NCBI GenBank assembly: GCA_963924565.1
Contig: OZ004608.1
Location: 14,012,001-14,076,000 of the forward strand
Origin: Ascidiella aspersa
Taxonomy: Eukaryota
Direction of reading: 5' to 3'
Length of the DNA stretch: 64,000 bases
A program made the translations under genes and the position numbers. The first letter of the stretch is position 1; each line of letters begins with the position of its first letter. Under the pieces are notes generated by a model. It was not told the DNA's origin. It searched no databases and was given only the letters and a program-made list of their open reading frames with translations. This document shows positions 206 to 28,600 of the stretch, piece by piece.

Positions 206-2563
206 CTGATGTGTATTTGGCCCACTCCTGATCTTTGCCTGTATTGTTTTGTTGGTTTGGTTTCACTGGAAGCATTTCGTGTGCGAGAAACTCATCATCA
301 CTAGACATGCCATCGCCACCTCTGTCAAATTTGCTTGATGATACTGTATCTTCTGTTAAATAATAATAAAAAAAAATTATGTCAATTGCTTATGAGATGT
401 TACTTAACCAAAAAATTTTGAATACTTTTTTCATTTTGGCTGCCTTTGGATTAGGTAAAAAAATGGAGAAGTTTGGCCATTCATTACAATTACAATAATG
501 TAGTACAAAGGTACACTTTTAAGTGAGTAGCAATGAGGCAATACATTTATACAAGTTTACCATTCTTCCTACAAACATAAATTTGCCAAGTAAATTATCC
601 TGCTCGTCATCATTGCAGAATGTAAATCACGATAATATATAAATGTGTGTAGGACCACAGAATATAAACTGAAGTAAAACAATTCGTTTTTTAATGGTTG
701 ATCATTTTACTGTATCCTAACAGGGGTTGAATACACAAGTTCAAACTAAGTATTAAATAATTCAAATGTGTGATAAGTTGCAAAGTATTTCTCCCTGAAA
801 CGTATGTACAGAAGGATAGATGTTTATATCTAATGAATCCTACCTATTATCATATTATTTTTTTGCTTTAAGTATTAAAGGCTTGTAGACAATAAAGTTT
901 GTTTTGATCAACTCAATAATGCCCATTACAAATCTATCACATTTTTAGTAACACTTTTTGTTTTAATATATTTCGTTTCTTAAAAAACTTAAAAAAAATA
1001 CTTGACAAATACTTGTGCAACCTCCAACAAATACCCACCTTTTGCATTCTTGGCATACTGACTGCGGAAGGCAATTGATCTGGAACGAACCTCCTCAAGG
1101 AAATCCTCAAAATCGTCTTCCACTTCGTCACTGGTAAAAAAAAATAAAAAAAAACATCCATTAACTTGTAATGAAAGTAATTAGGTTTGAAACAACATGG
1201 TTGAGGTAAGTGGTTCATAAACGTTTCCCCTTTATCTGTTATTGAATTTTAAAAATAATGAGCGGAGTAGCAAACACCTTAAACTTTCAAGGTTGCTAAA
1301 CCAAGGTGGAGTACCATTGGTTTAATCTAGAATTAACTTACAGTGTTAGGCTGTTTGGTCTACTGCTTGAGGTGCCCACAGCATTGGAAAGACTAGCAGA
1401 CTTCTCCTGCAACAATAATTGCGAAATGAAGAAGGCACAAGTAGAACTTAAAAAACCTTAAACACATTTTATAAAAGGTAAGTATAAATACAAACTTTTA
1501 ATGAAAGTGTCATTGATGCAGCTCTTGCTGCTTCACGTTGTGCTTCATTAAAGGCTTCGTCTTCAACTCTTAATAGCTCTTCCTCTTCATATAACTATAA
1601 TGTATATAAATTGGAGTCGTGACAAGTATTTGCAATGATAAGAAAAATATTTTTCTAAACAATAGCTTAAAGCACAAAAGTTTAAAAACTAAATTAAATG
1701 ATATGCATCTACTAAAGAAATTCTTAAAATGCATACAGAAGTCAAACTCCCCAAAGGAAAGACTGGTAAGTTTACAACATATCTTAAGATGACATATATA
1801 ACAGCCGGCTTTTACCTATAATACAAAAGAAAAATCCCTAATGTATGAAGCAGCCAGTAGAAGGGCAATATTAGAATAAAGCTCTATGCCAAATAGTTAC
1901 AAAAGAACAAGTATATATCTAGATATTTGCAAACAGCGAGGAAAGCGTTTCACAGGAAAACAAAACCTTAATATATTTGGTCTATTTTAGGCTGACAATT
2001 GCTTTGCACATATCCTTTATACATAACCATCCTGGTAAACCACCAATATATAAATAAATTAGCAGTTGTATTTATTACCTCTTTGTTAATCTGTTCATCA
2101 ACTTTCTTTTGCTCTTCAAGTAACTTATCATAGTCACGCTTGGCAATAAATTCTCGCTCTTCTTGTGTAATGATGCTAAAATTGAAAAAGATTTCATGGT
2201 AAATATCAAAAAGAATAATGAAGGTTTAAGGCAGAAACTAATAAACCAACTATCAAACAACTAACGGCAAATCAGTTCCATAATTTGACTGGTTTGCATC
2301 ATCAAGCATTAGGTTTTCAAACTCAACTCCAAAGTTCTGTGAAACATCATCTTTGTACTTTACCAAATGGCGCAACCTGAACATAAAATGGACCCGATTG
2401 AAATGCATGGCCACATTAATCAAAACATGCAATTTTGGTTTTATTATAGTTGTAGTTTTCTAGTGCAACTTTATTCCAAAAAACTGTCATAAAATTAGGT
2501 TTGGTACCTTTTCCTCCGGTTACTGCCAAACAAAATGCCAAGGCAGCCATAACACTGTTGCAT
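206..2563 (-). CDS. AP1AR: AP-1 complex-associated regulatory protein (Gadkin/gamma-BAR), 5' part; continues beyond the left edge
   Basis: Phase-consistent GT-AG exons 2563-2508, 2376-2266, 2175-2079, 1594-1496, 1406-1342, 1130-1039 and 352-206. They give MQQCYGCLGILFG...VEFENLMLDD...ITQEEREFIAKRDYDKLLEEQKKVDEQINKELYEEEELLRVEDEAFNEAQREAARAA...EDDFEDFLEEVRSRSIAFRS. This matches recalled vertebrate Gadkin motifs (N-terminal Cys cluster, IEFENL, AQREAARAA, EDDFE..L......FRS). Confidence 0.9.
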
Positions 2564-5501: not shown

Positions 5502-8500
5502 TCACTTGCCAACCCGGTCTGCTAAGCTTTGAATAATTTTCCAACAGCTAGACAGCCCTTCCCTGGTAGTGTTGACATGCCCTGCCGACACCCGAAGAAA
5601 GTAAATTCCCTTTTCGACCGTCGATGTCAAGAAGATAGTTTTGTCTGCCATCACTTCTTCGTAGAGACGCTCGTTCATGTCGTTAAGTTCCTAACATAAG
5701 TTATTGGATGAATTTTTTTTTATAGTTGGAAATAACTTAAATATAAGATATAAGTTCATTTACGATCCACATCATGACTACTATCTTGCATAAATATAAG
5801 GTGTATTCTTTTCAACTGAAATAGGCCCAAAAAATAGGAAATCTGATGACAAAAGATAGTAATAATCAGCGACTAAACAGTTGTGTCTGACAATAAAATG
5901 ATTAAAGAAAATGGTAACGTTTTAAAAAATCCAAAATGGCAGATAAATTTGTCACGAACCTTCTTGCTTAAATCTTTGTTAAACAGACGAAAGCAGACCA
6001 ATCCCATAGTGACTGGATATAGAACCTCGAACCTTTGATCTTTCTCTACGAGAGCTTCAAAATATTTCGCCTCGGCAATCGACCGTCGCACATGAGTGCG
6101 CAAGCCTTCCAAACCGACCATGCGCATCACAAACCAAAGCTTGATTGCTCGGAAACGTCTTCCAACCGGAAGTTCCCAATTCTAGAAATTAGTACATAAC
6201 ACAGTTAAACTTTAATTGTGGTACAATAATTTTCTTTTACTTTTTGTAATTACTTGTTCGGCCAGAAACAGCGGCTCCTTATTTTTACAATTTAGAAAAT
6301 ATTAGGAAATGGAGTCGTTATGAAACGAATTTTGTAAAAAAATTGATTTCATTAACTGAGTGATAAATTATGGTCTTTGAAGGAGCCACAAAGTGGCAAA
6401 TTCTGACAATCAATTGCTTGAAAAATAATATTGAATTTATACCATTTTTAAAGCGTTCGACGCATTTCAGCACTGCTGAATATTCTTAGTACGACATTGG
6501 TTGGTCTATATGTTTGCAAAATATATACAAACGACAATTTAAACTGCTGACTCATTTTCCTGCAAAATTATACTTTTTACACAAATAAATAAATTAAACA
6601 AAAAAACTTCTATTCAAAATCAATCTAAAAACAAATGTATTTACTAACCATGTAGTCTATGGCTATGTTTTGATTGTCGTGTCGAAGGTAGTGAGGATTA
6701 ACGTCAAAAACATTCGTCAATTCGACGCTATTTTTGACCCTGGAATGGTTAAATATAGTTCAAGCATATTATAAAGTAAAAACAAAATCATGTTGGTTTT
6801 ATCAATATACGCAAATGTAAGAGACTGTGGTCAACATTAAATGAAGAAGCATTTTTCAACACATTTACTGCAAGCTAATAAGGTGAGCGGTGGTCCCTAA
6901 TAGAGAGGCTGGTTCACGCAAAGTATAGGGTTCTTGGAAAATGTACTCAATTTACAAAGAGGAAATATGAAATCGTTGGTGAAAAAGCAGCTTCAGAAGG
7001 GCTAGACCACAGTTGTTAACACAGTTATGTGCGTGCATCTTTCATTTAACGAAATATGAAAATAGGGAAGTACGGACAACACCTATAAAGGCAAAAATTA
7101 AACTGAAAAATATTTTTGTGATACTTACCAGAACGCCGAGCAGTCGAAATTGACCATCATAAGTTTGTGCGGGTTGAAATTATAGGAGTCGCTGTACTGC
7201 GTGTAAAGTTTGTGAAACTCAGTTAAACACAATTGGTGAATTGATTTGACACAAAAGGACAATTACTATAGAGAAAAATATTACTGCGATACCATAAACA
7301 AGTCGCGAAAGTACAAGCTTAATTTTAGAGCTTTTTCAAAAAAAGGGTTATCCCAAAACAAAACTTTTTTTTAGGTTTAAAATATATCTGCATGTAAAGT
7401 GACTTCTTTATAAATTATAGGCCAGGGGTGTGTAACCTTTTAGAGTTAGACTAACGGACCAACTAAGCGTATACAGATAAGTTTTAATTCAGAGGAGCTA
7501 TGTCACATTGAGTACACAAAAATATTTACACAATATTTCAGTATGTCTGAATTAAACACGGCGATTTGGGGCAAACAAGTTGTAGTTGGTGGACTCAACA
7601 GCGGTATTGCAAAGTTTGGTTCACATTGATTTTATCTATATGAAGTCTACATCGCTTTAATTCTGTGAAGAACACACATTGCTTTTTCTCTTGTTAAGAA
7701 GTTCTTAACATTGCTTTTATATTGTACGGAAAATTTTTGTAACTTTAAGTCTTTAACACTCCTATACTAAAGCAGCACCGTCCTGTAGATACTATCCACA
7801 ACCTTAAAAGACATTTAATAATAGTAAAAATAATAGCATTTTTGGTCGTTACTACTATTTATCGGTTTGCATTGTACAAGTCTTTCTTGGTCGACGCCTC
7901 AAAAGACAATTCAAGTGTAAGGATTCAATTTTCAAATACTATTTTGGTTTAGTTTTTTCACAATTTAGATTGGGTAAGACAAAATGTCTATATATTTGCG
8001 ACTATCATGTATAAACCGTTATAGTTGGTCCAAAAGCGACTTCTGAAGGGCTAGATCGTACAGCCGTACAGGTATATATGTGTGTGTCTTTCATTGAAAG
8101 ATATGGTAAGTGCACCCCTTTAATGTGAAGTTGCTTGTACTAACAGAATGGAGCAGCATTGGCGTCATGGTTGTTTGTCGACTCGCTCCCCTCTTACCCT
8201 GTGTAGCTTAGTTGGTAGAGGCAAGGTCATGGTATGGCCGGAGGTTGAGAGATCTAATCTCTCTGCAGACTAGTTGTATTTCTAGCCTGCCTTGTTTTTT
8301 TTATATCTTTTATATCAACAGATTCGGTTAGTCCGGTGTACTATAATGCGTGAGCCGTAGATCACGGTGGTTGTACATTTCTATGTGTGTTTATCTTTCA
8401 TTGTTTGGGTCATGCGCACATTTAATCATAAAGGATTTAGGACCGAATGGTAAACAACCATTTTATGTGGGCTTTATTTCATAGGTAAAGGCTATTTATC

Positions 8501-11500
8501 AGCGCATTTAATTGTGTGGATAACATGAATGAAATCAATTTACCTCAATTCCTTCAGCAATATAACGCATCTCTGGACAAAGCAGCGCAGAACCAGCGTA
8601 AGCTGCGTCCACATGGAGCCACAAGTTTTCATCTTTACCTGTTATACAATGACATTCTGAGTTATAGGGACTATTTGTAAACAATGGATTTAATTTTCAA
8701 TGAAACGAATATGCACAAGTCTGTAAAACCTACATTCAGGTCTAGTTTACCTAGGTAATTATTGGATAAATTACTTTTGTTAATTACTTTATTACTTATA
8801 TGTTTTACTTGATTCCTATAAGTTACTTTGGATCTTTTTTCTGATAAGCAAATAGTTTAGATTAGAAGCTTACGTTTGCTAATACATAATACACAGCATG
8901 ACGTATGGTTTCGCAAACGGTTTTGCAAACATCGGATGCTAGCTTAAAACGTTTTGTGTAAGCAGTTAAGACACTTTTCACTTAATTTTTCTTACGTTGG
9001 ATAACGACTATTAAATAAACCTAGCCGAGAATGACTTTGCACTGGGAATACACGTTTGCTAATATGTATCTGTAATTCCTAATAGTGTTACTTCTTCGAC
9101 AAGGGCCATGTCCTATTTTAATTGTTAGAAAGTATTTACTCGACCCAATTTAGACACAATACGAAGCATTACATTTCGTTCAACATTGTGGAATTCTACG
9201 TAACTTATCGCGCTTACTGCAAAAGCTGCATACTATATAGTAATGTTACAACTAATTAACCCAAAAAGCGATGACAAGCATATTATAAGACGCTTAAACA
9301 TTTTAAACACTGGAAATAATACAGTTCGACTGTTTGTGTTTTGTATTTTTTTAAGTAATTTAAAAATAAATCAACGTTCGTCTATTTTAGATATGATTAA
9401 ATGTGCACTGGTGTACGTGTTTGATTTCGATGTGATTTGATGTTTTTGAGTCTAAATGTCGTTCACAGATGTTTTTGGCCTATAATAAGTTACTTAACAA
9501 CTTTATGGAAAATACTTTTAATTAAAAAGTACGATTTCGTTACTGGAACCTAGTCTTATACTCACATATCGGTCCAATCTCTTTCAGATTGTCGTAAGTG
9601 CAGCATGAAGTTGTTCCAAGTGTAGCGCAAAACTGTAGGAAATCATTAACATTTGGCTGAATATAGATTATTTTAATTTTTAGGAATGCTGCTATATTCG
9701 TGGTAAATTTTGGCAAAACCAAACCGATTGTTGAATTGCATGTTTTTTATACAGATATTCTCAACTTTCTTAATCTCGTTGGGTTCATAAGAACCTGTCG
9801 AAGGGATCCACAGACTCTCTTTAAAATATTACTTTTGTTCCTGAGCGGTGTAAATATGCAGTTTATTTAACAGGGACTATAGTGACTATAGTCAATTCGT
9901 TGCTGTTCAAAAAATCAAGCAGCAGTTAGGGTCAGTTTCGCTCTTCGCATTTTAGATGTAACATTGAGAATATGGCATTTAATTGTTTTTTTCTTCTGGG
10001 GGTTGACTGAACCGGTATGAAAAAAACGTAACATATATTTTATCATGAAAGGATTGAACGGGATTCTATTAGACCTATTATTCCTTAAATTATTTCTAAC
10101 AGATACAAGAATAGTCTCACAGTAGAGTGCAACTATAATTTAAAGCTAAATAAATACAAAACATTAACAATAACAAAATTCGCAAACACAGTAGATATCT
10201 TAATAACGGCCTTATTTTTTTGTTGTCCCAAAAGCTTACAGCTTCACTGAAGGCTTTAAGTCTTATACAGTGGTGGGATTCAAAATTTTTATCAGCCGGT
10301 TCTATCACAAAAGTCATATTTTTTAGCCGGTTCTGTTACAAAAAGTCATACTTTCTACTTATGACGCAACAATTCGATATTTAGACAAACAATCAAAAAG
10401 GAAAAATACTACAATTATAAAAATTAACACAATGTATAACTGTTACGTGCAAACTTGACTATTGCATATTAAAAATTACACTCAAAAATCGGTGTATCGG
10501 ATAAGATGCAAAAATCCGTTGACAGTAATAGGGTGTATCTTTATAGAATCCAAAACCATCGGCAGCAGGTTTTAGCCAGTCGATCACTGCTCCGCTGACG
10601 CGTATATTAACAAGTAAAACTCATTGTTAAAAAACATGAGTAAAAACAGGATCAGACGTTTTGTTCAAAGGAAAATCCGCTGACAGTATTAACCCGTAAT
10701 TCTAATTAACCGACTTAAGCCATAAAACCGAGATAAGAACAACATCAACGTCGGAATAAAAGACAGTTCGGAACAAAACCAAACTAGGAGTAATTCCACC
10801 TAATAAAATCTGAATAAGTTCTAAATCGGTCCTAAGTTCATAACTAACTCACCTAACAATTTTCACTCTAACCATTTTATTATCCCAGAATTAAACAAAA
10901 CCAAAAATATGTTGCTAAAACAGCGGCACCTTTTTCCAGTCGCGGACCAAAACCAGAACAGTGAATTTCTCATTACAAATTCTTAGATTTGCAGAGGTGT
11001 AGATTACGTTACTACCAGTGGTGGGATTCAAAATTTTTGTCAGCCGGTTCTGTTACAAAAAGTTATATTTTTCGGCAAATAATTAAAGTTGTTGCAATAA
11101 CAGGATGCAACCCCTGGTTACAGCGGAAGGTTTGAACCGGCTGAATACCATCACTGCGAACAGCCACACTAAAAAGCAGCAGTCGTCTCATGACTCGTAC
11201 TTATGACGCAACAATGCAATTTCCAGACAAACTATTAATGAAAATTATTACAATTATAAAAATTTAACACTATGAGAATTGCACATTTTGAAAAAAACAC
11301 GTAAACTACTTGGATATCAAAAATCGGTGTATCATCTCAGTTAAGATGCAAAAATCCATTGACAGTAACCAGTAATGCTAACCGGTTCGCTAATCTCATA
11401 AAATTTCGTGAGACGGTTCTATAGAACCGGTGCGAACCGGCTGAATCCCACCACTGGTCTTATATCGTCTAATGGAGGTTAAAATAAAAATCTAAATGTA

Positions 11501-14500
11501 ATGTTCCCCTTCGTTATGAAGCTGCTTGTACTAACAGATTGAGCAAGCATTGGCGTATGGTTGTTTCTCGACTCGTTCCCTTGTGAGCCTGCATAGCTCA
11601 GTTGGTAGAGCGACGGTCCCGGCTTGACCGGAGGTCGTGAGTTCGAACCTCACTGCAGGCTAGTTGTTGTTCTAGTCTGCTCTGCTTGCATCATTGATCG
11701 ACAGATTCGGTGAGTCTGCAATGGCTTTTCGGTGTACTAATAATACGTAAGCCGTTATCGTTGGTCAAAAAGCAGCTTCAGAAGGGCTAGATCTCAGTTG
11801 TAAGCACACATATATGTGTGTACATATGTTTCATTGTATTATGATATGATACTGGCGATCCCCTTCGTTATGAAGCTGCTTGTACTAACAGATTGAGCAA
11901 GCATTGGCGTATGGTTGTTTCTCGACTCGTTCCCTTCTGAGCCTGCATAGCTCAGTTGGTAGAGCGACGGTCCCGGCTTGACCGGAGGTCGTGAGTTCGA
12001 ACCTCACTGCAGGCTAGTAGTTTTTCTAGTCTGCTCTGCTTGCATCATTGATCGACAGATTCGGTGAGTCTGCAATGGCTTTTCGGTGTACTAAATGTAA
12101 TGTTCTATCATTAACTGAGTTGAAATATTACCAACACAGAACATGGGCCGCGGTTAATTGGAATTACAAGTAGCACTAAACAATACTAACATATATTGGA
12201 ATTTTTCCTCGGGCCTTGTCCTCCTTAATCGCTTCGAGAAGGGTCTCTCCCCGAACTGCTCCTAATTCATCTGCCTCCAGAAAGCGCATGTGCACCAGAG
12301 AAACTTGACCTGAATTCGATACACTTTAGGTAGAAGTTGCATTGCAGTTTTTTAACTTTACAAAAGTTGTGCCCTTGAAGACCTACTTGCTCTTTCCACG
12401 GACGAGTGACTATAAGAAGAGGTATAGGCGACCAATCGGTTCACGATCTCGCAGGTTGATTGGTCAGGGTTTAAGGCCAGTTGCTTTCGCACCGTTCTAC
12501 TTCGAGCAGAAAGCAAAGACATGAGTGTTGCTTCGCTTGCAGTTGCTGTTTGGAAGAATTTCGGTGATAGCAGTTGTACGTGATATTGTAATATATGCAT
12601 ACAAACACAACCAACTAATTGACAACCTAATGAAAAATTACAACACGAAGCAGATAAGCCATACTAATTTCTTTTATTTTGGAAAGAGCTATCCATCAAA
12701 TTATTTCCTTCGTTAGTAATATGCTACACCAGTGGTTTTCAACCGCCGGTCCGCCAAATATATTACAATTTTATATCTCAATTGTAAAATGCAAGATGTT
12801 GAAGGCTTGTCCAACAAATTTAGAACTTCGCCAGTACCGTAAATTGTAGCATTGTGACATAACATAGAGTTATTGGTCGACCTTTAACTTTATCGTACGT
12901 CACAATGCTGTTGTGCGAAACTGTTTAAAAGTAGGCTTTAACTTTTTTAAGTCTTAAATGTTAAAACCAGTTGTATGTGTCAAACCACGTATAACACATA
13001 TGATATCAAAAATACAGCAGCAAATTTCTCATTTAATTGAAGTTTCCACTCTTTGCTTTTAAGTTGCATGCTTTTGTCGTAATTACATATTGGGTTGATT
13101 TGTTTTTTTTGAACGTCCACCGGTCCTCAAATTTTGTTTTGGAATTTTACCTGTCCGTAAGCTAAAAAGATTGATAACCACTGTGCTACACTATAAAGGT
13201 GACATATCATAGTAACGGTCGGAAAACCACAACATTGCAAAGTGTCTTTGCGTCTCCAAATTCTGACCTTGAATAACCCCGCCACCTTTTCCGTTTCCTT
13301 CATTCAAGTAGAACTGTGGAAGATCAATAGCTTTTGCAAGCCAATCCATCACCACCGTTTCTAACTCGGTACAAGAAGGCGACGATTCCTAAAAAGAAAT
13401 AAGAAATTTTTAGAGTTGAATAAAATTGCTGATAAATTCTACTGAGTTCCAAGATCACAATCTTTTGTGACTTTCAAGTCACATTTCTCGTCAATTTAAT
13501 TTAATAAAACAACAAGACAACCTTAGAAATTATACAAAAAAACATTTGTATCCTGTCCTAATTATTCAGGAAAATGTTCCGGTTTGGGCTTTTTTATATA
13601 ACTTTTTGTGTTTACTGCTGTTTTTTTGCACTTAATTTGCATTTTAAAGCAAGTGAATTTTTTTAAGGCAGGGATTGGAAACCTGCAGTTCTTGGACACA
13701 ATGTAGCCTGCTTGCATATTTAATGTGAGCCGCATATTTAATGTGTCAAAGTTTTCTAAAAGTTAAAACTTAATTAAAACTCTACAAACATTACAAACAA
13801 TAAATACTAGTTATGCTGTAGTAATCAACAAGTATCCCTTTTGGAATTTCTTCTTACCCAAGTAAACCCAATATCGGCGATCGCAGTTGACAACACGTCG
13901 CCCAACATCGCCGGGTAGCTGTTAGCCGCTGGGAAAAACCCAAACATGTTGGACGAGTGCCATTGAAGAACGTTTTTGGTGACGTCAACGATATCTTTGA
14001 ACACATCCTGCCACTTTTCTCGCCCTTCGGGGGCTTCCTGGGGAACTAGGTTGCGCATGAAACCTTAAGAAAACGTAAATGGTAATTGCGTTGACTTTCT
14101 AGGCATAATCGGAAAATGTTAAGGTTTAAAAACGCTTTAACCAACAAGGTTATTTCGTGTGGCTTAAGAACACGTTTTATTTTATTGTTAAAAATCGTGA
14201 CGTAAATGCACTTTACCACAATATAATAATATATTTTTCTAGTTAGTGCTATCGGGTTCTTTTTAAGTTTCCGGTTGAATCTGGCAGATATTATATCATT
14301 TTTAACCTTGGTATTTGTGTTTTGTATTATAGAAGTCTTTTTTGTGTTTTATTAGTTACATTCTAAATCAGTGGTCGGCAAACTTTGGGCCGTGGCCCAA
14401 ATGTGGGCTGCAGAGCAATTTTTGTGGGCCGCGAGTTTCTTTTGAATAGCTTATAGTGTTTTATGTAGTTGTGGGCCGCGCGATAGACGTATTCATTGCA

Positions 14501-18525: not shown

Positions 18526-20677
18526 TGACAATAAAAGTGCATAACAAGTAAGTTAAACAGTCAATGTTTGGTGATAAAAACAGTAGTGATAAAAAAATAG
18601 CAACTTTAATAGGAAATATAATGTTGCCTATACTGATTATTACGATGGCGATCAACCATGCAATTACGGAAATATATTCATAATAGTAGAAATCTCATAC
18701 CATTCTAGATACCCAAGCCTTTCTCTGGCCCACAATTGCTTCCTAAAGGCGGATTAGGTTCTGAAGGATATTTTGTGAAAAACACGGCGCAAAAAATTGG
18801 AAAGTTTAGTGGTTTGAGTTCGTAAAATAAAATTTGACTAGATTTGTTATTTTTAACTTATATAATTTAACCCCATTGAAATTGTTGAACTTATTACACA
18901 CTATACATAAAAGTAACCTGTATTTTAAATCTGTAGTTTGTGAGATTTGTTTTTCCATTTTACTCAATCGATTTTTCATTGATGTGGATCAAATGGACGA
19001 ACCGGTTGACTGGCATGTTTCTGTTAGTTATTTTACCCAGGTGTTGTCCACAACATCTAATGCTCCGACTTTTATGCTAGACCCGCCTTTAACCAATTGT
19101 TCCCACTTTATTAGGTGATTAAACACGATGTTCTTAACCTCTCAAGTCATCCAGAATCTGCACATCTACTACTAAAACCCGTGCTTAGAGTTCATAAGTG
19201 TGAAAAGCAAGCTTGAAATGTTTTTTATAATATTTCGAGTCGCTCTATGATGTTGATGTAGACTTATAAGATATTATTAGTTTGCGGCTTTAAGGCTATG
19301 TACGTGTTGCGGTCTTGCAACATCTTTAGCCGTTAGTAATTACTTAAGGAATACTAAATTAACACACTCAGTAACCCAGTGGGTTTTAAACATTCGTGCA
19401 TTTCATAGGCGCCGGTTACCACGCAATTTACCTCGCGAATCTGTGTATGACTATAGCATGTGATATCACTTTTTATTGTGTAGATAATGTTGGATCAATT
19501 AGGATAGTATTCAGATATAGGAATTGGTATAGTGTATTTGTCGCCTAGTATTGTTGCCGTTTTGAAGATATATTCTATGATAAGGGAAAATGTTATGTAA
19601 AAGTCTTTGATTATAGTTGTTTATTGTTTGGTCGATAATGTATGTAAGTTACTGTAATGCTTAAGCTCGTTTTTGTTGCCAATAATTAATAATGGTATTT
19701 ACGTTTCTTGGTATTTTTGAGTATCAGGCAGATAGTCTTACTGCGGCAGAAAATTAGCGCTAAGATACAAATAATCAGAACTCACGCTAAATTTTTATTT
19801 ACGATATATGAGATCGTAAAATTGGTCCCCGAGTAACTTGACGTTTTTGTTCTGCTAAAGTAATATCTGCAATCACACATTATTATATTATGTCTATTCT
19901 TGTTAATTAAATTTGACAATAATGCAGTCCGCAAAGAAAGTTTTAACGCACTTAACGGATAAAAAATAAAAACGATAACGATTTAACTCAGTTAGCACAT
20001 GAGAGGTTAGCTGCTTTGACCGTTTTAAACCAGGCTAATTATGCAGTTTGAAGTTTGGATTGCACGCCATAAAGTATAATAGGGTTGCCAGCTGATATAA
20101 TGAAATATGATCTATTGCCGGAAAGCAGTCTGTCAATGCATGGGACGCACCATGAAGCGGCCCACGTATTAACACTTTTGCGCTCTGCTTACACATGTAA
20201 AAGCTAACATTGACGCGACGCCTTTTCGCTGGAAAAACGACACGCATGTTATTTTTCCACTCCGTTTGCGCGAAAATAAAATAGCACCTGAAAGGGAAGG
20301 TCCTTTTCGCATTGTAGGCTACGTTAACGCGCACCAATTTAACTGTCGATTTGTCGCAAAATGAATTGCGCACGATTCCGCGTAATGAGGCTTATTCTAT
20401 AACCTTAAACCATAATATCACTACTGCACTACTGAATGATAAAGCATTTTAACGAAAAGTAGAATTCAACGAAATTCAATTGCTCGTTAAATTGAACGAA
20501 GTTTAAAATGCAGATTTCCGCTTGTAAATGTAAGCATTTTTCTGTGAAACAATGCATAATTATTTTGTAAATAAATAACGTATCAGACCGTGTGGTTGTG
20601 CAGTTTTATGTTTGACAATGATAGCAGTAATGCTACTTATCGTATGATTAATGTGATAATTAAGTTATATATGAATT

Positions 20678-21012
20678 GAAGTGATCGGAACACTTTTGCA
20701 AAAAATTCCGGAGGTGACGGCCACCTTTGCAAAAAACGGAAGTGATCGGAACACTTTTGCAAAAAATTCCGGAGGTGACGGCCACCTTTGCAAAAAACGG
20801 AAGTGATCGGAACACTTTTGCAAAAAATTCCGGAAGTGATCGGAACACTTTTGCAAAAAAATCCGGAGGTGACGGCCACCTTTGCAAAAAACGGAAGTGA
20901 TCGGAACACTTTTGCAAAAAATTCCGGAGGTGACGGTCACCTTTGCAAAAAACGGAAGTGTGAGGGGCACTTTTGCAACACTCCCTTGAGGTTTGAAAAA
21001 CACCTTTGCAAA
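20678..21012. repeat. Array of alternating 33-bp (A) and 28-bp (B) hairpin units inside the LTR element
   Basis: A = ggaagtgatcggaacacttttgcaaaaaattcc; B = ggaggtgacggccacctttgcaaaaaac. Order is ABABAABAB plus two degenerate units. Confidence 0.95.
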
Positions 21013-22322
21013 ATTTTTTAAAAAATCAATTTTTGTCTGATTTTTTTATCGCCTGAAATCGTAACTGCAATTATTCCATAATCAATATGCGCAGCTGGAG
21101 ATTAGTATGAACGTCTTGTGGTTTCAGAAGGTTTGGCACATGCACGGGAAAGCAGGCTAATATGCGAATGAGTTGTTAGCACGAAATGGATCGGTAACAC
21201 TAGCTATTATGGTACGTAGAATGCGATAAATGCTTCACGCTTCAGGCTGGGCCACTCTGTAAATACCGCTCACTAGCATCGTTTCATTGTTTCCCTCCAA
21301 TGATCTTGGATAGCAGCGCAGAAGACTCGTAATTGGAGTAGGGATTGGTTGCAGGTTGTTTTCCTAATCATTTTACAGCTAGGCCTGATCCCCTGGATAA
21401 CTGTGAACTAAGATTAGCGATAAAATCCTGTCATTGAGGAAGTGCGCACACTCATGTAACCATTTCCGAAGATATTCACGACGACACTAAAGTCTTGTCA
21501 GTGTTGTCCAACGTCAATTGTTTTCCGTGTTCTTCGACTTGTGGACATGCCATTCAACGTTATTCAGATGGTCAGTCACGCGCATGCAGCACGCGTCCAT
21601 GTGACACCGCGTGTCCTCCTTGCAAGACTCGGGCGGGAGCCCCTGCTTCATTAAAACTTTCAATTTCAAGAAGGAAAACTTCAAGCCTGGCGTCATTGCT
21701 TTCCTACCTGGACATCTTGGGGAAATTGGATCAAGTTTTCAGCTCCTGGCATAGAAATGCAAAGTCGTTCTTTGCAGTTGCAACCGGCCAAATGACTGGA
21801 TACGTATACAGGAAACCAATAACTGCCCTTAAATTTTCGCAAACATATCGCTATTTGAACCTCGCTTTTCTCACTTTTCTCACTTTTCGTCTAATTAATT
21901 AATTGTTACTATACAACAACGGGGTGATTTTAACGCTCCTCTCCTTGATTTATTTTTGTTAGCTTATCCACAAGAATGGTTTCCCAATAACACCATAATA
22001 ACGAACCGTAAAGCTTCCTTTCCTGTTCGTTAGCTACGGACCGCGCATGTATAAAAAGGTCGCGCCCTTTCATGTCGTTTAGCAACTGGTTCTCCTAGGG
22101 TCGCCATAGCACATAAAATAACCCTTGCCCTATTTGGCAATGTAATTAATATTTCAGTAGCTCTCGTATGTTTCAAACCGACTAACTTTCGGATAAAGCG
22201 TTTTCTTTTATGTCTTTGATTGCTTGTTTGTTTTCCGACGATTCACTATGAAATGCACAAATTTAAAACTGAACTAAATTCTAGGCTAATTATACCCTCC
22301 AAAAAACAAATAGACCAAATTC

Positions 22323-23278
22323 ACGGCTACTGAACTGCAGGATCAAAGCATCGCTTTTTCCTTGCAACAAACAAGTTTTACAGTTAAAGATTTACATGCT
22401 GGGACAGAAGCACTCGCCCGCGACTTGCGAAACTTTGAACAAATGCAACGTTCCGAAGACTGTCAACTATTCCGCCTAACACAACAAAACCGTCTTCTTG
22501 GGCTACAGAACCAACGTAAGCAACTTGAGACGTCTCACATTTCTCTCGCCACTTCAACCGCTGAACGGGATTTGCTCCGAGCCTGCCTTCGTTCACTACA
22601 CACCCTTGGAAACCTCACCCGGTATAACACTTCGATTTATTCCTTCACCTCATCGTAAGGCATTCTAAGATTTTCTCGCCTTGCAAGAATTGAGTCTATG
22701 GAAGCCTCCAACACTTCCGATACGAACTTCACTGGAATCAGCGCGATCCTCCACCGGCAAAACACAAACATCTCTAAGAAACTTGAAGACATCGCGAGTT
22801 TCGACAACACAAGCATAAATCTAACGTTCAGCAACTTTCGTCCTTTGGTTTTCACTGAGGATAGCCACCTATTCAACTTCTCGCATGGCGCTTTCTTTGC
22901 TAATGCTGGTGCAGGACCCAACTCAATCGAAGGCGTCCGTGACATAGGATTTTAGGCCAACCCCTTTCAATGGTGGCAATCATCGGAAGTTTGGCGCTAG
23001 CAGCATTTTTACTTCTCATCGGCGGATGCTACGCATGGAATCGTTTTCGTCACAGTAAAGACAATGGCAAACACCGACAAGGAATCGCGTTTTCAACTCT
23101 CTTAAAAAGGGCGATGGCATGTTGCGGTCTTGCAACATCTTTAGCCGTTAGTAATTACTTAAGGAATATTAAATTAACACACTCAGTAACCCAGTGGGTT
23201 TTAAACATTCGTGCATTTCATAGGCGCCGGTTACCACGCAATTTACCTCGCGAATCTGTGTATGACTATAGCATGTGA
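22323..23278 (+). pseudogene. Degenerate envelope-like type I membrane glycoprotein, C-terminal part
   Basis: ORFs 22362-22658 and 22698-22955 are in the same frame, separated by a single TAA. A frameshift near 22950 leads into ORF 22970-23278 with the TM helix MVAIIGSLALAAFLLLIGGCYAW followed by a basic tail. Many N-x-S/T sequons; canonical env position just before the PPT. Confidence 0.65.
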
Positions 23279-24500
23279 TATCACTTTTTATTGTGTAGAT
23301 AATGTTGGATCAATTAGGATAGTATTCAGATATAGGAATTGGTATAGTGTATTTGTCGCTATGTATTGTTGCCGTTTTGAAGATATATTCTATGATAAGG
23401 GAAAATGTTATGTAAAAGTCTTTGATTATAGTTGTTTATTGTTTGGTCGATAATGTATGTAAGTTACTGTAATGCTTAAGCTCGTTTTTGTTGTCAATAA
23501 TTAATAATGGTATTTACGTTTCTTGGTATTTTTGAGTATCAGGCAGATAGTCTTACTGCGGCAGAACATTAGCGCTAAGATACAAATAATCAGAACTCAC
23601 GCTAAATTTTTATTTACGATATATGAGATCGTAAAATTGGTCCCCGAATATCGTAAAAGTACGGTAAAGACAAATCACAAAATGTACAGAATTCGTTACA
23701 CAGGAAATTATACCAAGACTGTTATTCTCACAAGTGCAGGTTATAAATATAGCGTTTGATCCCATGTATCCCAATGAAAAACAACTCTGTGCAACGCTTA
23801 TAATCGTGCCGGAAGTTGTCTGTCTCATAGTGTTCAAGTTCAGTAGCGGATGACGTTTGTATTTAATTGCATGTTTACAAATTTGTGCATTAAGTTCGTG
23901 ACAAGTTTGTCCATTTTTGCAAAATAATGCTGGTGTTAAGAACAATCTTCTTCGAGTTTTCCATTTGTGCACGAACGTTTAATCGCCTAACTGAAATGCT
24001 AATCTAGTTGTCCAAATCTGCCAACAAATACTTTTAACTGAAACGTTTACTCGATCTAAAGACACAAGCTACCACCAGACTGTAGGTAGACGCTGATTAA
24101 CATAATTACATCGCCCAACCAGTATTTAAGAAAACCACTAATCAAACAAAAAAGCGCCTTTTGTCCTTTCTGTGCAATAATTCTGAAAAATTATTAAAAA
24201 CACCATAGGCCTACCTATAGAATTCAGATTTTTCTGCATTAAACATAACACTAAAATCACATTGGTTTTGTGAAAAAAATCACATTGGTTTTGAGAAAGT
24301 TATCTTTCAATCGTATGAAACACGCACTGAGTCGCACTCGTCTTAGTCTTATTTACGTCTTTAGACAGTCTAAATTCGCAACGGTAATAAACGTGCGCTA
24401 CAACCCGACTATAGGCCTCTTTATGGCACCTTTTAGTCGTCTAAAATTCGTTTTCGTCTTGGTCATATCTGCGTCTATGGGAAATCGTAAAGGTAATACA

Positions 24501-24729
24501 ACTAGTACTGCAGTAAGGTTCGAACTTACGACCTCCGGTCAAGCCGGGGCCGTCGTTCTACCAACTGAGCTATGCAGGATCAGAGAGGGACACGCGAGAA
24601 ACAACCATGCGCCAATGCTCGCTCAATCTGTTAGTACCGGTACAAGCAATACAATTGAAGGGGATCCACAGTACCATATCATTTATTCGATGAAACATGC
24701 ACACATAAGCGTTCTGATAACGGAGATCT
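24501..24729 (-). mobile_element. Circularly permuted partial copy of the tRNA-mimic repeat family
   Basis: Reverse complement of about 11787-12020, spanning the unit junction and the cloverleaf. Flanked by aggtaataca (24491-24500) and aggtaatgca (24730-24739). Confidence 0.85.
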
Positions 24730-25553
24730 AGGTAATGCACACTTATTAAAATCGTTTAAAAACACATTTCAAATATACTCTCGTTTTGGGTGTTTAAGGC
24801 GTCTTCTTGTCATTTTTATTCGTCTAAACTCGTAAAACACCTAAAAAACATCATTTAAATCGAGTACAAAAACGTTTTTATGGCGTCTTTTGAACGTCCA
24901 AAACTGGTTTTCGTCTTGGTCTAGTTTTCGTCTATGAAAAATCGTAACGGTATTTCACGACCATAAAAATCGTTTGAAATACGTGTCAGATATGATCTCT
25001 TTTGGGGGGTTAGGACGTCTCAGGTATTTTTTAATTCGGCTAAAACGCATTGATTATTTCGTCTTTTAAGTTACACATTTTCGCAACACTTTGGTTATCA
25101 ACACTAGAATTACCGCGTTGTTGACAAACCTAAAACTACCACGAGCGGTCAAAATAACTGTTAGTTCAATAAGAAAAATGCAAAATAATTGCGTTTTCTT
25201 TTCATTAGGAGTTTCTTTTAACTATTGAGACGTTTCAGCGTTTATCTAGTTTAAGTTTAGCAAAACATTGTATTTCAAATGGGCCTTTATACCGTCGGTG
25301 TTGTTCCTACTAACAAAAACAGTAAACGTAATTGTGCTTCCATAACGCTATCCGTCTTACCGCACACGGATTAGTTTTAAAGTAGAAATCACTACCGCTC
25401 CTGATATCATGCAATATTGCGCTTTTAGTTTACAGACCCCAAACTAGTTTAGCGGATTATTAGAATTACAACACTATATAACACATATATTTTCAAGTTT
25501 TCGGAAACTATGAAACCATAGGAGGAAACAAATTACGAAAGGATGTTTTAACG

Positions 25554-25624: not shown

Positions 25625-28600
25625 TCAAGAGTTTAAGCGACGCAGAAAGTCTTTGATCTGAAATTTAAAGGCATTGATAAGCAAACCTAAATAAACTGGT
25701 TTACTATTAAATAACGTAACACAACTTTACGCACGCATGTAATATTGTCTGGTATTTAACGAACGGTAAACAACACAGATCAATAACTTTTTGGACACAA
25801 AGTGTTAGGGTCTTTTATGATATTTCTGGGCCCACGAGCCCGAAAATGCGTTCATTGTTTTTTGATTAGTTTGTTTTTAAAAGCTCTACTTTTCAAAATA
25901 TTCGTCAATAAAAATATGTTTAATTTTCCACGAGTGTGGTGTCTAGCAACGTGGAGGTTAAATCAGACTTAATGCAATATTTTTTTATCTTAGATTTTGC
26001 TAATACCACATCAATGTGCAGATTCAAACCTTACTTTGAGCTGGGAGATCAAGTTAATTTCGGGCTTCGCGCAAGTTTGTAAATGTTCCACAGAAACTAT
26101 TTGTTTCTGGACTTAAAGCTAAATAGATAGCAATCACTTAAACAACTTTCCTCTCAGATATACGCCATGTCGCATTTTGAGGGTAACTTTTTGGTCAATA
26201 AACAATAAATGACTGTTTGTTTGTTGCATTAAGGCTTTTTTATTTCTTTGAATGTACCTGGGCGTACTCACGCTATGCCTATGTGATGTACGAGGCGACG
26301 TTTATGTATTCGTAGGCGAAAAATGCGAAAAAAATAATTTTGCGATATCTCAGAAACTAGAGCAAATTCAAACAACCCAAGTCCATTTTCGGAATCAGGG
26401 GCCCTAAAGTATCATTAGAAAATTGTTGACCCGGTAATTAAGCCACGTGTTACTTAAGCCCAAACGAACAAAGCTCACCATTGCGTATCCCAGCAAAGGT
26501 CGCTGGTTTGAATGCAAATAACCAAGTTGGTGCTCGATCTCAGATGCGAAGTCGGTGGCGAAGCTGGTTGCGTTGCGACGCTCGCCCGGCGAAATTAGCA
26601 TGCAGCCTGGGAAGTAATGGACACAAGATCATTTGATTTAGTGTTAAGATTTTCTTTCAGTGTTCAGTTCACTCAAAGCAGTGGTTCTCAAAGTATCACC
26701 TGCGACCTAAACATGGGTCGCGCAGTGTCTGCCAAGATGATTCAAATCTGTTGACACCATCTTTTTTTATTCAATGTTGTGAGCTTTTTTAATTCCACCG
26801 GAATTGAATTAGTGCATTTTACGTATTTCATTTAGCTTCATCTCAATAAAACATGTTTTTTGTTTACCGTGCCGTAACAGGTTCCGAGAGTTAGCCAAGT
26901 AGCTTGTAAGACTTTAGGTTAATATTAGTTGATAACGGGAGTGTCTTTGGAGTTGAATAGTTCAGCAAGTAGGTAGTGGAGTATCAAGACACTGAAACAT
27001 TGATACACAGGGGCGTACAACTGCGATCTGGCCCTTCAGAAGTCGTACTGACCAACGATAACGCCACACATATCATAGTACACGAAATACCTTCAAAGGG
27101 CTAACTAAAATCAGTTAATCAATTCAGGAATATTTGATGAATTGTGTAAGCAAGGCCCGACTACAAAAACAACTAGCCTGAGGTGATTTTGAACTTACGA
27201 CATCCGGCCATACAGGGATTTTTTCACTGTTGTCAGTTTCACAACTTTTTTTAACAACAAAAAATATGACCTAATTGACCGTTACTTGCCCCACGACTAA
27301 TGAGACAAAAAGGCCATTGGATAGGCCGTGATCTTGTTGATCACTCATGGTAAATCCAAGGGATGAAATTACACGTGAAAAAGCAGGAATCCATTCTAAC
27401 TGACACAACAAGTTTTAAATATAAACACGACGTTAAACTCTTGTTAGTATTTTTAGATTGGCGAAACACCACATTTTAAAACAAAAACGTATACATAGGT
27501 CAAGTATGAATCGTACTGCAACTGCGACGCCAACACAATTTCGGCGTTACTTACCAAGTGCGAGGGCTTGCAGATCGAGCGCCTTGAAGTGTTGAGCCAC
27601 ACCGGAGATGTCGATTCTCAGCAAAACGGGACACTTCATAAGGAAGCGGTACGAAGTCAGGGCCGCATCGCGCTGAAACGTAGAAAGTACATACCACAAT
27701 CAAGTGTTCGTATTGCAAAAATATGTTTCTTAGTGGCCTAATATTGTCGCCATATTAATGCCCCATATAAGTCGACCAACAAACTGAAAGAGAGTAGGGC
27801 GAGAGCAGTAACCCCTCTAAGATGCGCAAATGCGCAAATTGTAGACCGGGACATTTGTGCGGCAAAACTGCTTTTTTCGCACTTTTGCAATAAATTTCTT
27901 ATTAGGATTAGGCAATAAACAAAGACAATTGTTAAAAAACTATAAAAGCACAAAAGTACGTAGAAGCTATATGAATTAAATGCGTATTTGTTCGTAATTC
28001 GGTAAAATTGTACACAAATTTTACCAGTTTACAACATTTCTAACTTATTTGTCCCTGTGGTAACTCAACGTTATTCATGCTCAACAAAACATACATTTGC
28101 AGCATACAAAGTTTCGCGAAAGAGACACTGGCAAAAAGTCTTTTTGTAGCTGACAACAAAAAACAACTGCTTACGTTTGTCTACTTTTCGATTCGATAAG
28201 TTGTAAGGAGGCTGGTACTTTTACAATATCGATAAGTTATAAGGAGGCTGGTACAATTACAATATCGATAAGTTGTAAAGAGGCTGGTACTTTTACAATA
28301 TCGATAAGTTATAAGGAGGCTGGTACAATTACAATATCGATAAGTTATAAGGAGGCTGGTACAATTACAATATCGATAAGTTGTAAAGAGGCTGGTACTT
28401 TTACAATATCGATAAGTTATAAGGAGGCTGGTACAATTACAATATCGATAAGTTGTAAGGAGGCTGGTACTTTTACAATATCGATAAGTTATAAGGAGGC
28501 TGGTACAATTACAAAGCTTGAATACTTTGTACTTAACTGGGACAAACCTGTCGAGTGTCGAGTGGTGGTGTTAGCGCCACTAGCGGCAGTGTGACGCACG

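What the first reader, a model, noticed from the sequence alone, without database searches (positions are those of the whole stretch)
11505..12094. Retrozyme-like mobile element built on a tRNA mimic: circularly permuted, TSD-flanked copies of a 354-bp unit
Seen: five insertions of one family (6973-7058, 8015-8404, 11505-12094, 24501-24729 minus, about 26992-27210 minus). All have different start and end points, and three run across the head-to-tail unit junction. The tRNA-like part is internal rather than a 5' head, and there is no common poly(A) or simple-repeat tail. Three copies have 10-15 bp flanking direct repeats, in two cases overlapping element sequence (microhomology). Known: ordinary tRNA-SINEs have a fixed 5' tRNA head and a fixed 3' end. 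Animal non-LTR retrozymes form tandem, permuted units of a few hundred bp via circular RNA, but they carry a hammerhead; I see no CUGANGA/GAAA core on either strand here. Inference: a Pol III-transcribed multimer is cut once per unit by tRNA-processing enzymes (RNase P/Z or an anticodon-loop endonuclease plus RtcB), circularised, and reinserted by rolling reverse transcription. I do not recognise this as a described family.
Basis: partly seen in the sequence, partly recalled or inferred. Interest (0 to 1): 0.9.

Follow-up and report, generated by a model that had tools for sequence, protein, structure and literature searches.

The report
tRNA-like retroelement with Penelope-style insertions
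This is a young, abundant non-coding mobile element with a 354-bp unit carrying a tRNA-shaped fold; it inserts as head-to-tail arrays, often with an inverted piece at the 5' end, as Penelope-like retrotransposons do, but it has no hammerhead ribozyme.

Summary
Window 11505-12094 is 1.67 copies of a 354-bp unit between a perfect 13-15 bp target-site duplication (TSD). Four older, permuted copies lie in the window. The genome holds thousands of copies.

One claim fails: the ends are not uniformly permuted. The 5' ends vary, but nearly all 3' ends fall in two short zones, S1 (unit 226-241) and S2 (unit 329-340), which share TTTC..TGTAYTA.

About 40-50% of insertions carry an inverted segment at their 5' side. 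It always ends in the other zone, and one TSD pair flanks the whole composite. Arrays reach 8 units, and each array is internally uniform, including its private variants.

Reading: 5' truncation, partial tandems, an inverted 5' copy and an extension at one end only form the published insertion signature of Penelope-like elements (PLEs). Active PLE copies in this genome show the same pattern. I read the family as a non-autonomous, PLE-mobilised, retrozyme-like element with a conserved tRNA-like fold and no hammerhead.

- No partner PLE was identified.
- No RNA data exist, so a circular RNA and cutting by tRNA enzymes are untested.
- T5 and T4 runs argue against a Pol III full-length transcript.

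An earlier unchecked note of this scan (s1-787262) reports the same idea elsewhere in this genome.

The parts
11505..12094 (+). The insertion: 1.67 head-to-tail units of the 354-bp element (unit position 1 = 11505). It ends in 3' zone S1.
11492..11506 (.). Left copy of the target-site duplication CTAAATGTAATGTTC. Its last 2 nt also match element sequence.
12091..12105 (.). Right copy of the target-site duplication. Its first 4 nt (CTAA) are also the element's 3' end, a priming microhomology.
11587..11661 (+). tRNA-like cloverleaf, first unit. It has A and B boxes and an aberrant anticodon loop CCGGCTT.
11941..12015 (+). tRNA-like cloverleaf, second unit
12021..12025 (+). T5 run 6 nt after the tRNA-like 3' end (consensus unit 163-167). 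It is disrupted in the first unit by a G at unit 165.
11730..11745 (+). 3' initiation zone S1 (unit 226-241, TTTTCGGTGTACTAATAATA region). Here it is internal and read through. The same zone at 12084-12094 is this copy's 3' end.
11833..11844 (+). 3' initiation zone S2 (unit 329-340, TTTCATTGTATTAT), internal here. Unit 235-331 between S1 and S2 behaves like a PLE 'tail'.
11757..11798 (+). 3' arm of a long predicted RNA helix (unit 253-294). It pairs with 11851-11893 (unit 347-354 plus 1-35).
6973..7050 (+). Older 5'-truncated copy holding only unit about 253-331 (tail only) and ending in S2. The 11-bp TSD GAAATATGAAA lies at 6962-6972 and 7051-7061.
8012..8404 (+). Older copy, about 73% identical, unit 244 through the junction to about 331 (about 1.2 units). 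It ends in S2.
24501..24729 (-). Older copy, unit 283 through the junction to 163. TSD AGGTAATACA (24491-24500) and AGGTAATGCA (24730-24739). The 3' end lies at a third TTGTAT motif.
26992..27218 (-). Older, decayed copy, unit about 113 to about 329. It ends near S2.

Best explanation
This is a recently active, non-autonomous retroelement. Its 354-bp unit holds a structurally conserved tRNA-like fold and no ribozyme. It integrates by target-primed reverse transcription in the manner of Penelope-like elements (PLEs).

Shown:
- cDNA synthesis starts in one of two short zones, S1 or S2, which share TTTC..TGTAYTA. There are 1-7 nt of microhomology to the nicked target.
- Synthesis runs a variable distance toward the 5' end and often passes the unit boundary. 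About 12% of young insertions hold 2 or more units, and arrays reach 8 units.
- In 40-50% of events an inverted segment lies at the 5' side and ends in the other zone.
- One 10-15 bp TSD pair flanks the whole composite.
- An A-rich run lies just 5' of the TSD.
- Each array is internally uniform.

Inferred:
- The enzyme is a PLE reverse transcriptase with GIY-YIG endonuclease acting in trans.
- The inverted segment is a second cDNA primed from the other target strand.
- The template is effectively endless: a unit-length circle, or a concatemer read repeatedly.
- The tRNA-like fold acts at the RNA level, in processing, stability or RT recruitment, rather than only as a Pol III promoter.
For: - Ends and TSDs: 3' ends cluster at unit 224-246 or 329-342 while 5' ends are spread. 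TSDs of 11-15 bp flank 12 of 14 young loci (a 13th has 8 bp; the 14th abuts an assembly gap), including all 7 composites. The null never reaches 10.
- Orientation: every close opposite-strand pair is in (-)(+) order, with 5' ends facing each other. This holds for 7 of 7 pairs, 6 of 6 clear pairs (one shared), and about 20 pairs.
- Opposite zones: main and inverted segments used opposite zones in 15 of 15 assignable composites.
- Array uniformity: all units of an array share its private variants (25C x7, 342G x4, 170G x3, 165del x6). Elsewhere those variants occur only as single copies or not at all.
- Literature: PLE insertions are 5'-truncated partial tandems, often with an inverted 5'-truncated copy and a 30-40 bp tail at one end only. 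Non-autonomous PLE derivatives give multicopy head-to-tail insertions (PMC8557442; PMC8969392). Animal retrozymes are proposed to be non-autonomous PLE derivatives (bioRxiv 10.64898/2026.07.22.740005).
- Active PLEs here: at least 62 GIY-YIG hits. One ORF has RVT_1 plus a C-terminal GIY-YIG domain, and its copies are 98-99% alike. Two composite PLE copies have an inverted arm, a 33-nt tail at one end only, and 10-12 bp TSDs.
- RNA structure: the tRNA-like fold shows covariation. The unit RNA folds with z = -5.1.
Against: - No partner was found.
- LINE twin priming also gives 5' inversions and variable TSDs.
- The comparison with PLE composites in this genome rests on two copies.
- No RNA evidence exists of any kind.
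- Array lengths have a heavy tail (about 65 loci with one copy, 7 with two, one with 4, one with 8). Later local amplification could also produce this.
- Variant 342G exists only in its own array, which fits local amplification as well as a circle.
Confidence: 0.66

Rival explanations
1. It is an ordinary tRNA-derived SINE mobilised by a LINE with an AP-type endonuclease. The inverted segments come from L1-style twin priming. Arrays of more than one unit arise later by unequal crossing-over between the repeated parts of 1.x-unit insertions.
For: The family has a tRNA-like module with A and B boxes, variable 5' truncation, fixed 3' zones, 10-15 bp TSDs and junction microhomology. The heavy-tailed array lengths and a variant confined to one array fit local amplification. 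In bivalves, TSD1-(SINE)n-TSD1 arrays have been attributed to recombination (PMC11481361).
Against: The tRNA part is not the 5' head, and 5' ends do not pile up at it. There is no poly(A) or microsatellite tail. Insertions of 1.2-1.9 units are common and already need a template longer than one unit. Classical twin priming predicts that the main segment's 5' end abuts the second priming site, but it is scattered. The inverted arm always uses the other zone (15 of 15), which is the PLE rule of a tail at one end only. The A-rich run lies outside the TSD rather than at its start as for L1.
Confidence: 0.2
2. It is a satellite DNA derived from a tRNA gene or SINE that spreads at the DNA level, through extrachromosomal circles, rolling-circle replication and microhomology-mediated reintegration.
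For: Copies are permuted tandems of variable length with microhomology at the junctions. Arrays are internally uniform.
Against: The polarity is strict: 3' ends are fixed, 5' ends vary, and inverted neighbours are only ever in (-)(+) order. TSDs are regular at 10-15 bp. About 85% of young insertions hold one unit or less. No large source array appeared among the best hits.
Confidence: 0.05
3. It is cargo or an internal tandem repeat of a Helitron/Helentron or another DNA transposon.
For: Helitron-type elements carry tandem arrays in some invertebrates (general knowledge, not tested).
Against: TSDs of 10-15 bp are present. No constant termini lie outside the unit, and flanks are unrelated between loci. 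Ends fall inside the unit itself.
Confidence: 0.01

Closest known systems
Animal non-LTR retrozymes (Cervera & de la Pena 2020, PMC7229834; Li et al. 2026 preprint 10.64898/2026.07.22.740005)
   Same: Short (150-450 bp), low-GC, non-coding units in head-to-tail arrays from dimers upward. TSDs are longer than 4 bp. They are presumed to be mobilised by PLEs, with rolling reverse transcription proposed.
   Different: Their defining type I hammerhead is absent here on both strands. This unit carries a conserved tRNA-like cloverleaf instead. Circular RNA is shown for retrozymes and unknown here.
Penelope-like elements and their non-autonomous derivatives (Craig et al. 2021, PMC8557442, e.g. MRC1/Chlamys; Evgen'ev & Arkhipova 2005)
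   Same: 5' truncation, partial or multicopy tandems, an inverted 5'-truncated copy at the 5' side, and an extension at only one end. The PLE copies of this genome have similar TSD lengths.
   Different: The unit has no ORF. No sequence similarity to the one PLE 3' end available was found. The 'tail' is 97 nt rather than 30-40 nt. It has a tRNA-like module, whereas this genome's canonical PLE has a minimal hammerhead about 58 nt before its 3' end.
Schistosome Sm-alpha / Sj-alpha SINE-like elements (as reviewed in PMC6765202)
   Same: A unit of about 330 bp with a Pol III-type promoter, found both dispersed and in tandem, with propagation through multimeric transcripts proposed.
   Different: Those carry an active hammerhead that cuts the multimers. 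None is present here.
Tandem tRNA-SINE arrays TSD1-(SINE)n-TSD1 in the clam S. broughtonii (PMC11481361)
   Same: tRNA-derived units in arrays of 4-15 flanked by one TSD pair, with head and tail truncated at internal junctions. Palindromic arrangements also occur.
   Different: Those were attributed to LINE partners plus unequal recombination. Initiation zones and the inverted-arm rule were not analysed there.
L1 twin priming (5' inversion)
   Same: Two target strands each prime a cDNA, the 5' ends are joined by 0-4 nt of microhomology, and one TSD pair flanks the whole.
   Different: Here the second primer uses a defined zone, always the other one. In older copies the inverted arm is just the stretch between S1 and S2. 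This geometry differs from L1.

Membership tests
LINE-dependent tRNA-derived SINE | tRNA-derived head forms the 5' end of full-length copies | tested here: not met
   The 5' ends are scattered over the unit. Only two of about 34 lie near the tRNA start (both at unit 90; tRNA start = unit 83). The tRNA-like part is flanked by element sequence on both sides.
LINE-dependent tRNA-derived SINE | Internal Pol III A and B boxes | tested here: met
   Rfam tRNA 55 bits and an ARAGORN cloverleaf, with canonical D and T arms. However, T5 and T4 runs lie inside the unit.
LINE-dependent tRNA-derived SINE | 3' tail that is poly(A), a simple repeat, or shared with a partner LINE | tested here: inconclusive
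   There are two fixed 3' zones and no poly(A). No LINE-like match was found in about 230 kb of held sequence. The genome as a whole could not be searched.
Animal non-LTR retrozyme | Type I hammerhead ribozyme in every unit | tested here: not met
   No CUGANGA core on either strand. No ribozyme family at E<=10.
Animal non-LTR retrozyme | Short low-GC units in head-to-tail arrays with TSDs longer than 4 bp | tested here: met
   354-bp units in arrays of 1.2-8 units, with TSDs of 10-15 bp.
Animal non-LTR retrozyme | Expressed as unit-length circular RNA | not testable with these tools
   No RNA run holds the sequence, and only DNA contigs were available.
PLE-type insertion (autonomous or non-autonomous) | 5' truncation with partial or multicopy head-to-tail tandems | tested here: met
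PLE-type insertion (autonomous or non-autonomous) | Inverted 5'-truncated copy adjoining the 5' end within one insertion event | tested here: met
   Seen in 7 of 14 young and 8 of 19 unselected insertions. TSDs flank the composite, and the order is always (-)(+).
PLE-type insertion (autonomous or non-autonomous) | Extension ('tail') present at only one end of the insertion | tested here: met
   Main and inverted arms ended in opposite zones in 15 of 15 composites, so the 97-nt stretch between S1 and S2 sits at one end only. The same holds for the two PLE composites L054 and L055.
PLE-type insertion (autonomous or non-autonomous) | 3' end similar to an autonomous PLE of the same genome | tested here: inconclusive
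   There is no similarity to the one PLE family fetched. Other GIY-YIG groups exist but could not be fetched.
Helitron / Helentron | No TSD, insertion between A and T, constant 5' TC and 3' hairpin-CTRR ends | tested here: not met
   TSDs of 10-15 bp are present, and the ends lie within the repeated unit.

The most novel reading that the evidence does not exclude
The tRNA-like fold has taken over the job of the hammerhead. Host tRNA-processing enzymes cut longer transcripts once per unit, and a tRNA-type ligase closes the product into a 354-nt circle. A Penelope-like reverse transcriptase then copies the circle round and round from the S1 or S2 zones. This would be a ribozyme-free route to retrotransposing circular RNAs.
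Probability: 0.18. Interest if true: 0.85.

Novelty: new variant of a known kind. Interest (0 to 1): 0.6.

Why it matters
How PLEs make their tandem and inverted insertions is not understood, and no in vitro system exists for them (PMC8557442).

This family is small, very young (copies 98-99% alike, about 300 exact hits of a 24-mer specific to the young copies) and non-coding. It has two mappable initiation zones, a strict rule that the two arms use opposite zones, and internally uniform arrays. That makes the mechanism readable from sequence and easy to rebuild in an assay.

It also shows that retrozyme-like amplification does not need a hammerhead. A tRNA-shaped RNA under structural selection sits where this genome's canonical PLE carries its ribozyme. 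This bears on what the ribozyme is for, and on whether some "SINEs" and "SINE satellites" of invertebrates are in fact mobilised by PLEs.

Tried and rejected
- Rfam at gathering and at E<=10 on the dimer gave only tRNA. Rfam also missed the minimal hammerhead of this genome's PLE, so the negative for the unit rests on the direct core-motif search.
- RNA evidence: no RNA run holds the sequence. All laid runs were DNA contigs and gave no RNA ends, no circle junction and no empty-site allele.
- Partner search: blastn of the unit against the PLE loci found only an unrelated nearby family copy in L056. Searching unit sub-regions against all held DNA found only short family fragments.
- One mistyped variant pattern gave an empty result and was redone.
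- A circular-fold script timed out. The linear fold was used instead.
- The organism was not identified because run names are coded.
- A link between the long helix and the inversion junctions (unit 10/253 and 36/246 in a few old copies) was considered. It does not hold for young copies and was not pursued.

Full report
**1. The observation**

Window 11505-12094 is 1.67 head-to-tail copies of a 354-bp unit. Positions 11505-11740 and 11859-12094 are 99% identical. The insertion lies between two copies of CTAAATGTAATGTTC, at 11492-11506 and 12091-12105. The first four letters of the right copy are also the element's last letters.

Each unit holds a tRNA-like cloverleaf, at 11587-11661 and 11941-12015 (Rfam tRNA 55 bits; ARAGORN "Ala-GGC" with an aberrant loop CCGGCTT).

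A blast of a unit trimer on the window recovers the four other copies:
- 6972-7059 (+), unit 253->331
- 8012-8404 (+), unit 244 across the junction
- 24501-24729 (-), unit 283 across the junction to 163
- about 26992-27218 (-)

TSDs are clear at three copies: 15 bp, 11 bp, and 10 bp with one mismatch. In 281 mock junctions an exact repeat of 10 or more never occurred.

No ribozyme family matches the dimer even at E<=10. The CUGANGA hammerhead core is absent from both strands of the consensus.

**2. The family in the genome**

The assembly is 308.6 Mb. A 24-mer from the T-arm and acceptor region has 2,675 matches at one mismatch or fewer, against 0 for the reversed control. A 24-mer specific to the young copies has 302 exact matches.

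The best hits are arrays of 1.7 to more than 7 units, 98-99% identical to the window copy, on many chromosomes.

**3. The ends are polar, not uniformly permuted**

I mapped 14 distinct young loci and 20 loci taken in genomic order from the pattern list. The 5' ends are scattered over the unit.

The 3' ends fall almost entirely in two zones:
- S1, unit 224-246 (..TTTTCGGTGTACTAATAATA)
- S2, unit 329-342 (..TTTCATTGTATTAT)

The two zones share TTTC..TGTAYTA. The exact end within a zone shifts with 1-7 nt of perfect or imperfect match between the target and the element. Contigs from other runs also leave the element at S1. One window copy ends at a third TTGTAT motif.

TSDs are 10-15 bp (n=19). 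An A-rich run lies immediately 5' of the TSD, with A in 14 of 19 sites at positions -2 and -8.

**4. Inverted 5' segments**

Seven of 14 young insertions and 8 of 19 unselected ones carry a segment of 50-330 bp in opposite orientation at their 5' side. The TSD flanks the whole composite, so each composite is one event. The inversion junctions overlap by 0-4 nt.

Every close opposite-strand pair seen anywhere is in (-)(+) order, with 5' ends facing each other. This holds for 7 of 7 pairs, 6 of 6 clear pairs (one shared), and about 20 pairs.

In all 15 composites where both ends could be assigned, the inverted arm ends in the zone the main arm did not use. Under independent choice each such outcome has probability 0.5 or less, so 15 in a row has p<=3e-5. 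In older copies the inverted arm is usually just the stretch between S1 and S2 (unit 223..253 -> 331).

**5. Arrays**

Within an array all units are identical, including variants private to that array: 25C x7, 342G x4, 170G x3 and 165del x6. Unit junctions are invariant.

Elsewhere in the genome:
- 25C occurs once.
- 342G occurs nowhere else.
- 170G occurs at five single-copy loci.

So I saw no case of one array being copied into another. Each array looks like one unit-length template read repeatedly. It could also be a short insertion amplified soon afterwards.

In the unbiased young sample of about 76 loci, about 65 hold one marker copy, 7 hold two, one holds four and one holds eight. This heavy tail fits a mixture of linear and endless templates. 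It also fits some later amplification. Insertions of 1.2-1.9 units are common, so a template longer than one unit is needed in any case.

**6. What this matches**

The literature describes PLE insertions as:
- 5'-truncated
- arranged in partial tandems (pseudo-LTRs)
- often with an inverted 5'-truncated copy at the 5' end
- carrying a 30-40 bp tail at only one end

Non-autonomous PLE derivatives give multicopy head-to-tail insertions (PMC8557442; PMC8969392). Animal non-LTR retrozymes are proposed to be non-autonomous PLE derivatives.

This genome has at least 62 GIY-YIG matches. One family has an ORF with RVT_1 plus a C-terminal GIY-YIG domain, and its copies are 98-99% alike.

Two composite copies of that PLE show the same rule as the element:
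- In L054 the inverted arm ends at the main 3' end, and the direct arm carries a 33-nt tail. The TSD is 10 bp.
- In L055 the arrangement is reversed. The TSD is 12 bp.

The element's S1/S2 behaviour is therefore the PLE "tail at one end" pattern, with a 97-nt tail.

That PLE carries a minimal hammerhead core (CUGAUGA..GAAA) about 58 nt before its 3' end. The element has its tRNA-like fold about 70-75 nt before S1.

No sequence similarity links the unit to this PLE. Other PLE groups could not be fetched. The partner therefore remains unidentified, and a LINE cannot be excluded.

**7. RNA features**

The cloverleaf is kept across copies that differ by up to 25%. In those copies 91% of cells pair, against 29-45% for slid controls. 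The acceptor pairs change CG/UG/UA and AU/GU/GC, and the T stem changes UA->AU and GC->AU. The sample is small and partly selected on the T arm, so this is supportive rather than conclusive. It agrees with the scan note s1-787255.

The whole unit folds far better than shuffles (-129.8 kcal/mol, z=-5.1). A long helix joins unit 347-35 to unit 253-294. It has a few compensatory changes at 18-271, 157-170 and 303-314.

The consensus has T5 directly after the tRNA-like part and T4 before S1. A Pol III transcript would therefore tend to stop before the initiation zones.

No insertion end marks an RNase P or RNase Z site. A circle would hide such a site, so the idea is untested rather than refuted. 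No RNA data were available.

**8. Verdict**

The element is real, mobile and young. The best reading (0.66) is a non-autonomous, PLE-mobilised, retrozyme-like element with a selected tRNA-like fold in place of a hammerhead.

The main rival (0.2) is a LINE-driven SINE with twin priming and later array growth. DNA-level satellite spread and Helitron cargo are unlikely, given the strand polarity and the TSDs.

The closest described relatives are animal retrozymes, non-autonomous PLEs, schistosome Sm-alpha (Pol III promoter plus hammerhead), and clam SINE arrays of the form TSD1-(SINE)n-TSD1.

It is a new variant of a known kind. An earlier unchecked note (s1-787262) reports the same idea on another piece of this genome. 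I reached the PLE reading before I saw that note.

Noticed in passing
window 41104-41246 (core at 41144-41175, minus strand): A hammerhead-like core (CUGACGA, a 7-bp helix II, GAAA) sits inside a 43-nt inverted repeat. It looks like a compact hammerhead retroelement of another family. Rfam did not report it at gathering score.
   Followed up: partly
L053-L056 (G000 C1:15.31 Mb, C1:28.94 Mb, C7:16.67 Mb, C7:23.15 Mb): A recently active canonical Penelope-like element (RVT_1 plus C-terminal GIY-YIG, copies 98-99% alike). It has a minimal hammerhead about 58 nt before its 3' end, inverted 5'-truncated arms, and a 33-nt tail at one end only.
   Followed up: partly
L051 (G000 contig C35:36721-39927): This contig carries a bacterial-type SSU-LSU rRNA operon. 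The LSU match spans about 700 nt more than the model, and a GIY-YIG frame lies inside it. It is probably a symbiont, contaminant or organelle-like contig with an intron homing endonuclease.
   Followed up: no
contigs of run X2 laid on window 11665-11910 and 12016-11910: A related repeat joins the tRNA-like 3' end (unit about 160) through about 30 other letters back to unit about 52. This suggests a shorter tandem variant of about 140 bp that is little more than the tRNA-like part.
   Followed up: no
window 11016-11456, also 10268-10312: A MITE-like repeat with terminal inverted repeats (CAGTGGTGGGATTCA...) lies directly upstream of the element. It has very high depth in DNA runs.
   Followed up: no
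window 19305-19604 and 23120-23419: Two 300-bp direct repeats, 99% identical and 3.8 kb apart, enclose a 61/155-bp tandem array (20678-21013). No long ORF lies between them. This could be a non-coding LTR-like or pseudo-LTR element.
   Followed up: no
window 36455-36717, 43028-43304 (inverted), 49891-50044, 51509-51772: A separate dispersed repeat family (78-90% alike), unrelated to the tRNA-like element.
   Followed up: no
G000 C4:21240139 (+) and C4:21242121 (+): A family copy carrying the 170G variant lies about 2 kb upstream of a weak GIY-YIG match on the same strand. This may be chance proximity or a composite, and it could not be fetched.
   Followed up: no
target sites of 19 insertions (element orientation): An A-rich run lies immediately 5' of the TSD, with A in 14 of 19 sites at positions -2 and -8. 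Unlike L1, the run is outside the duplication.
   Followed up: partly
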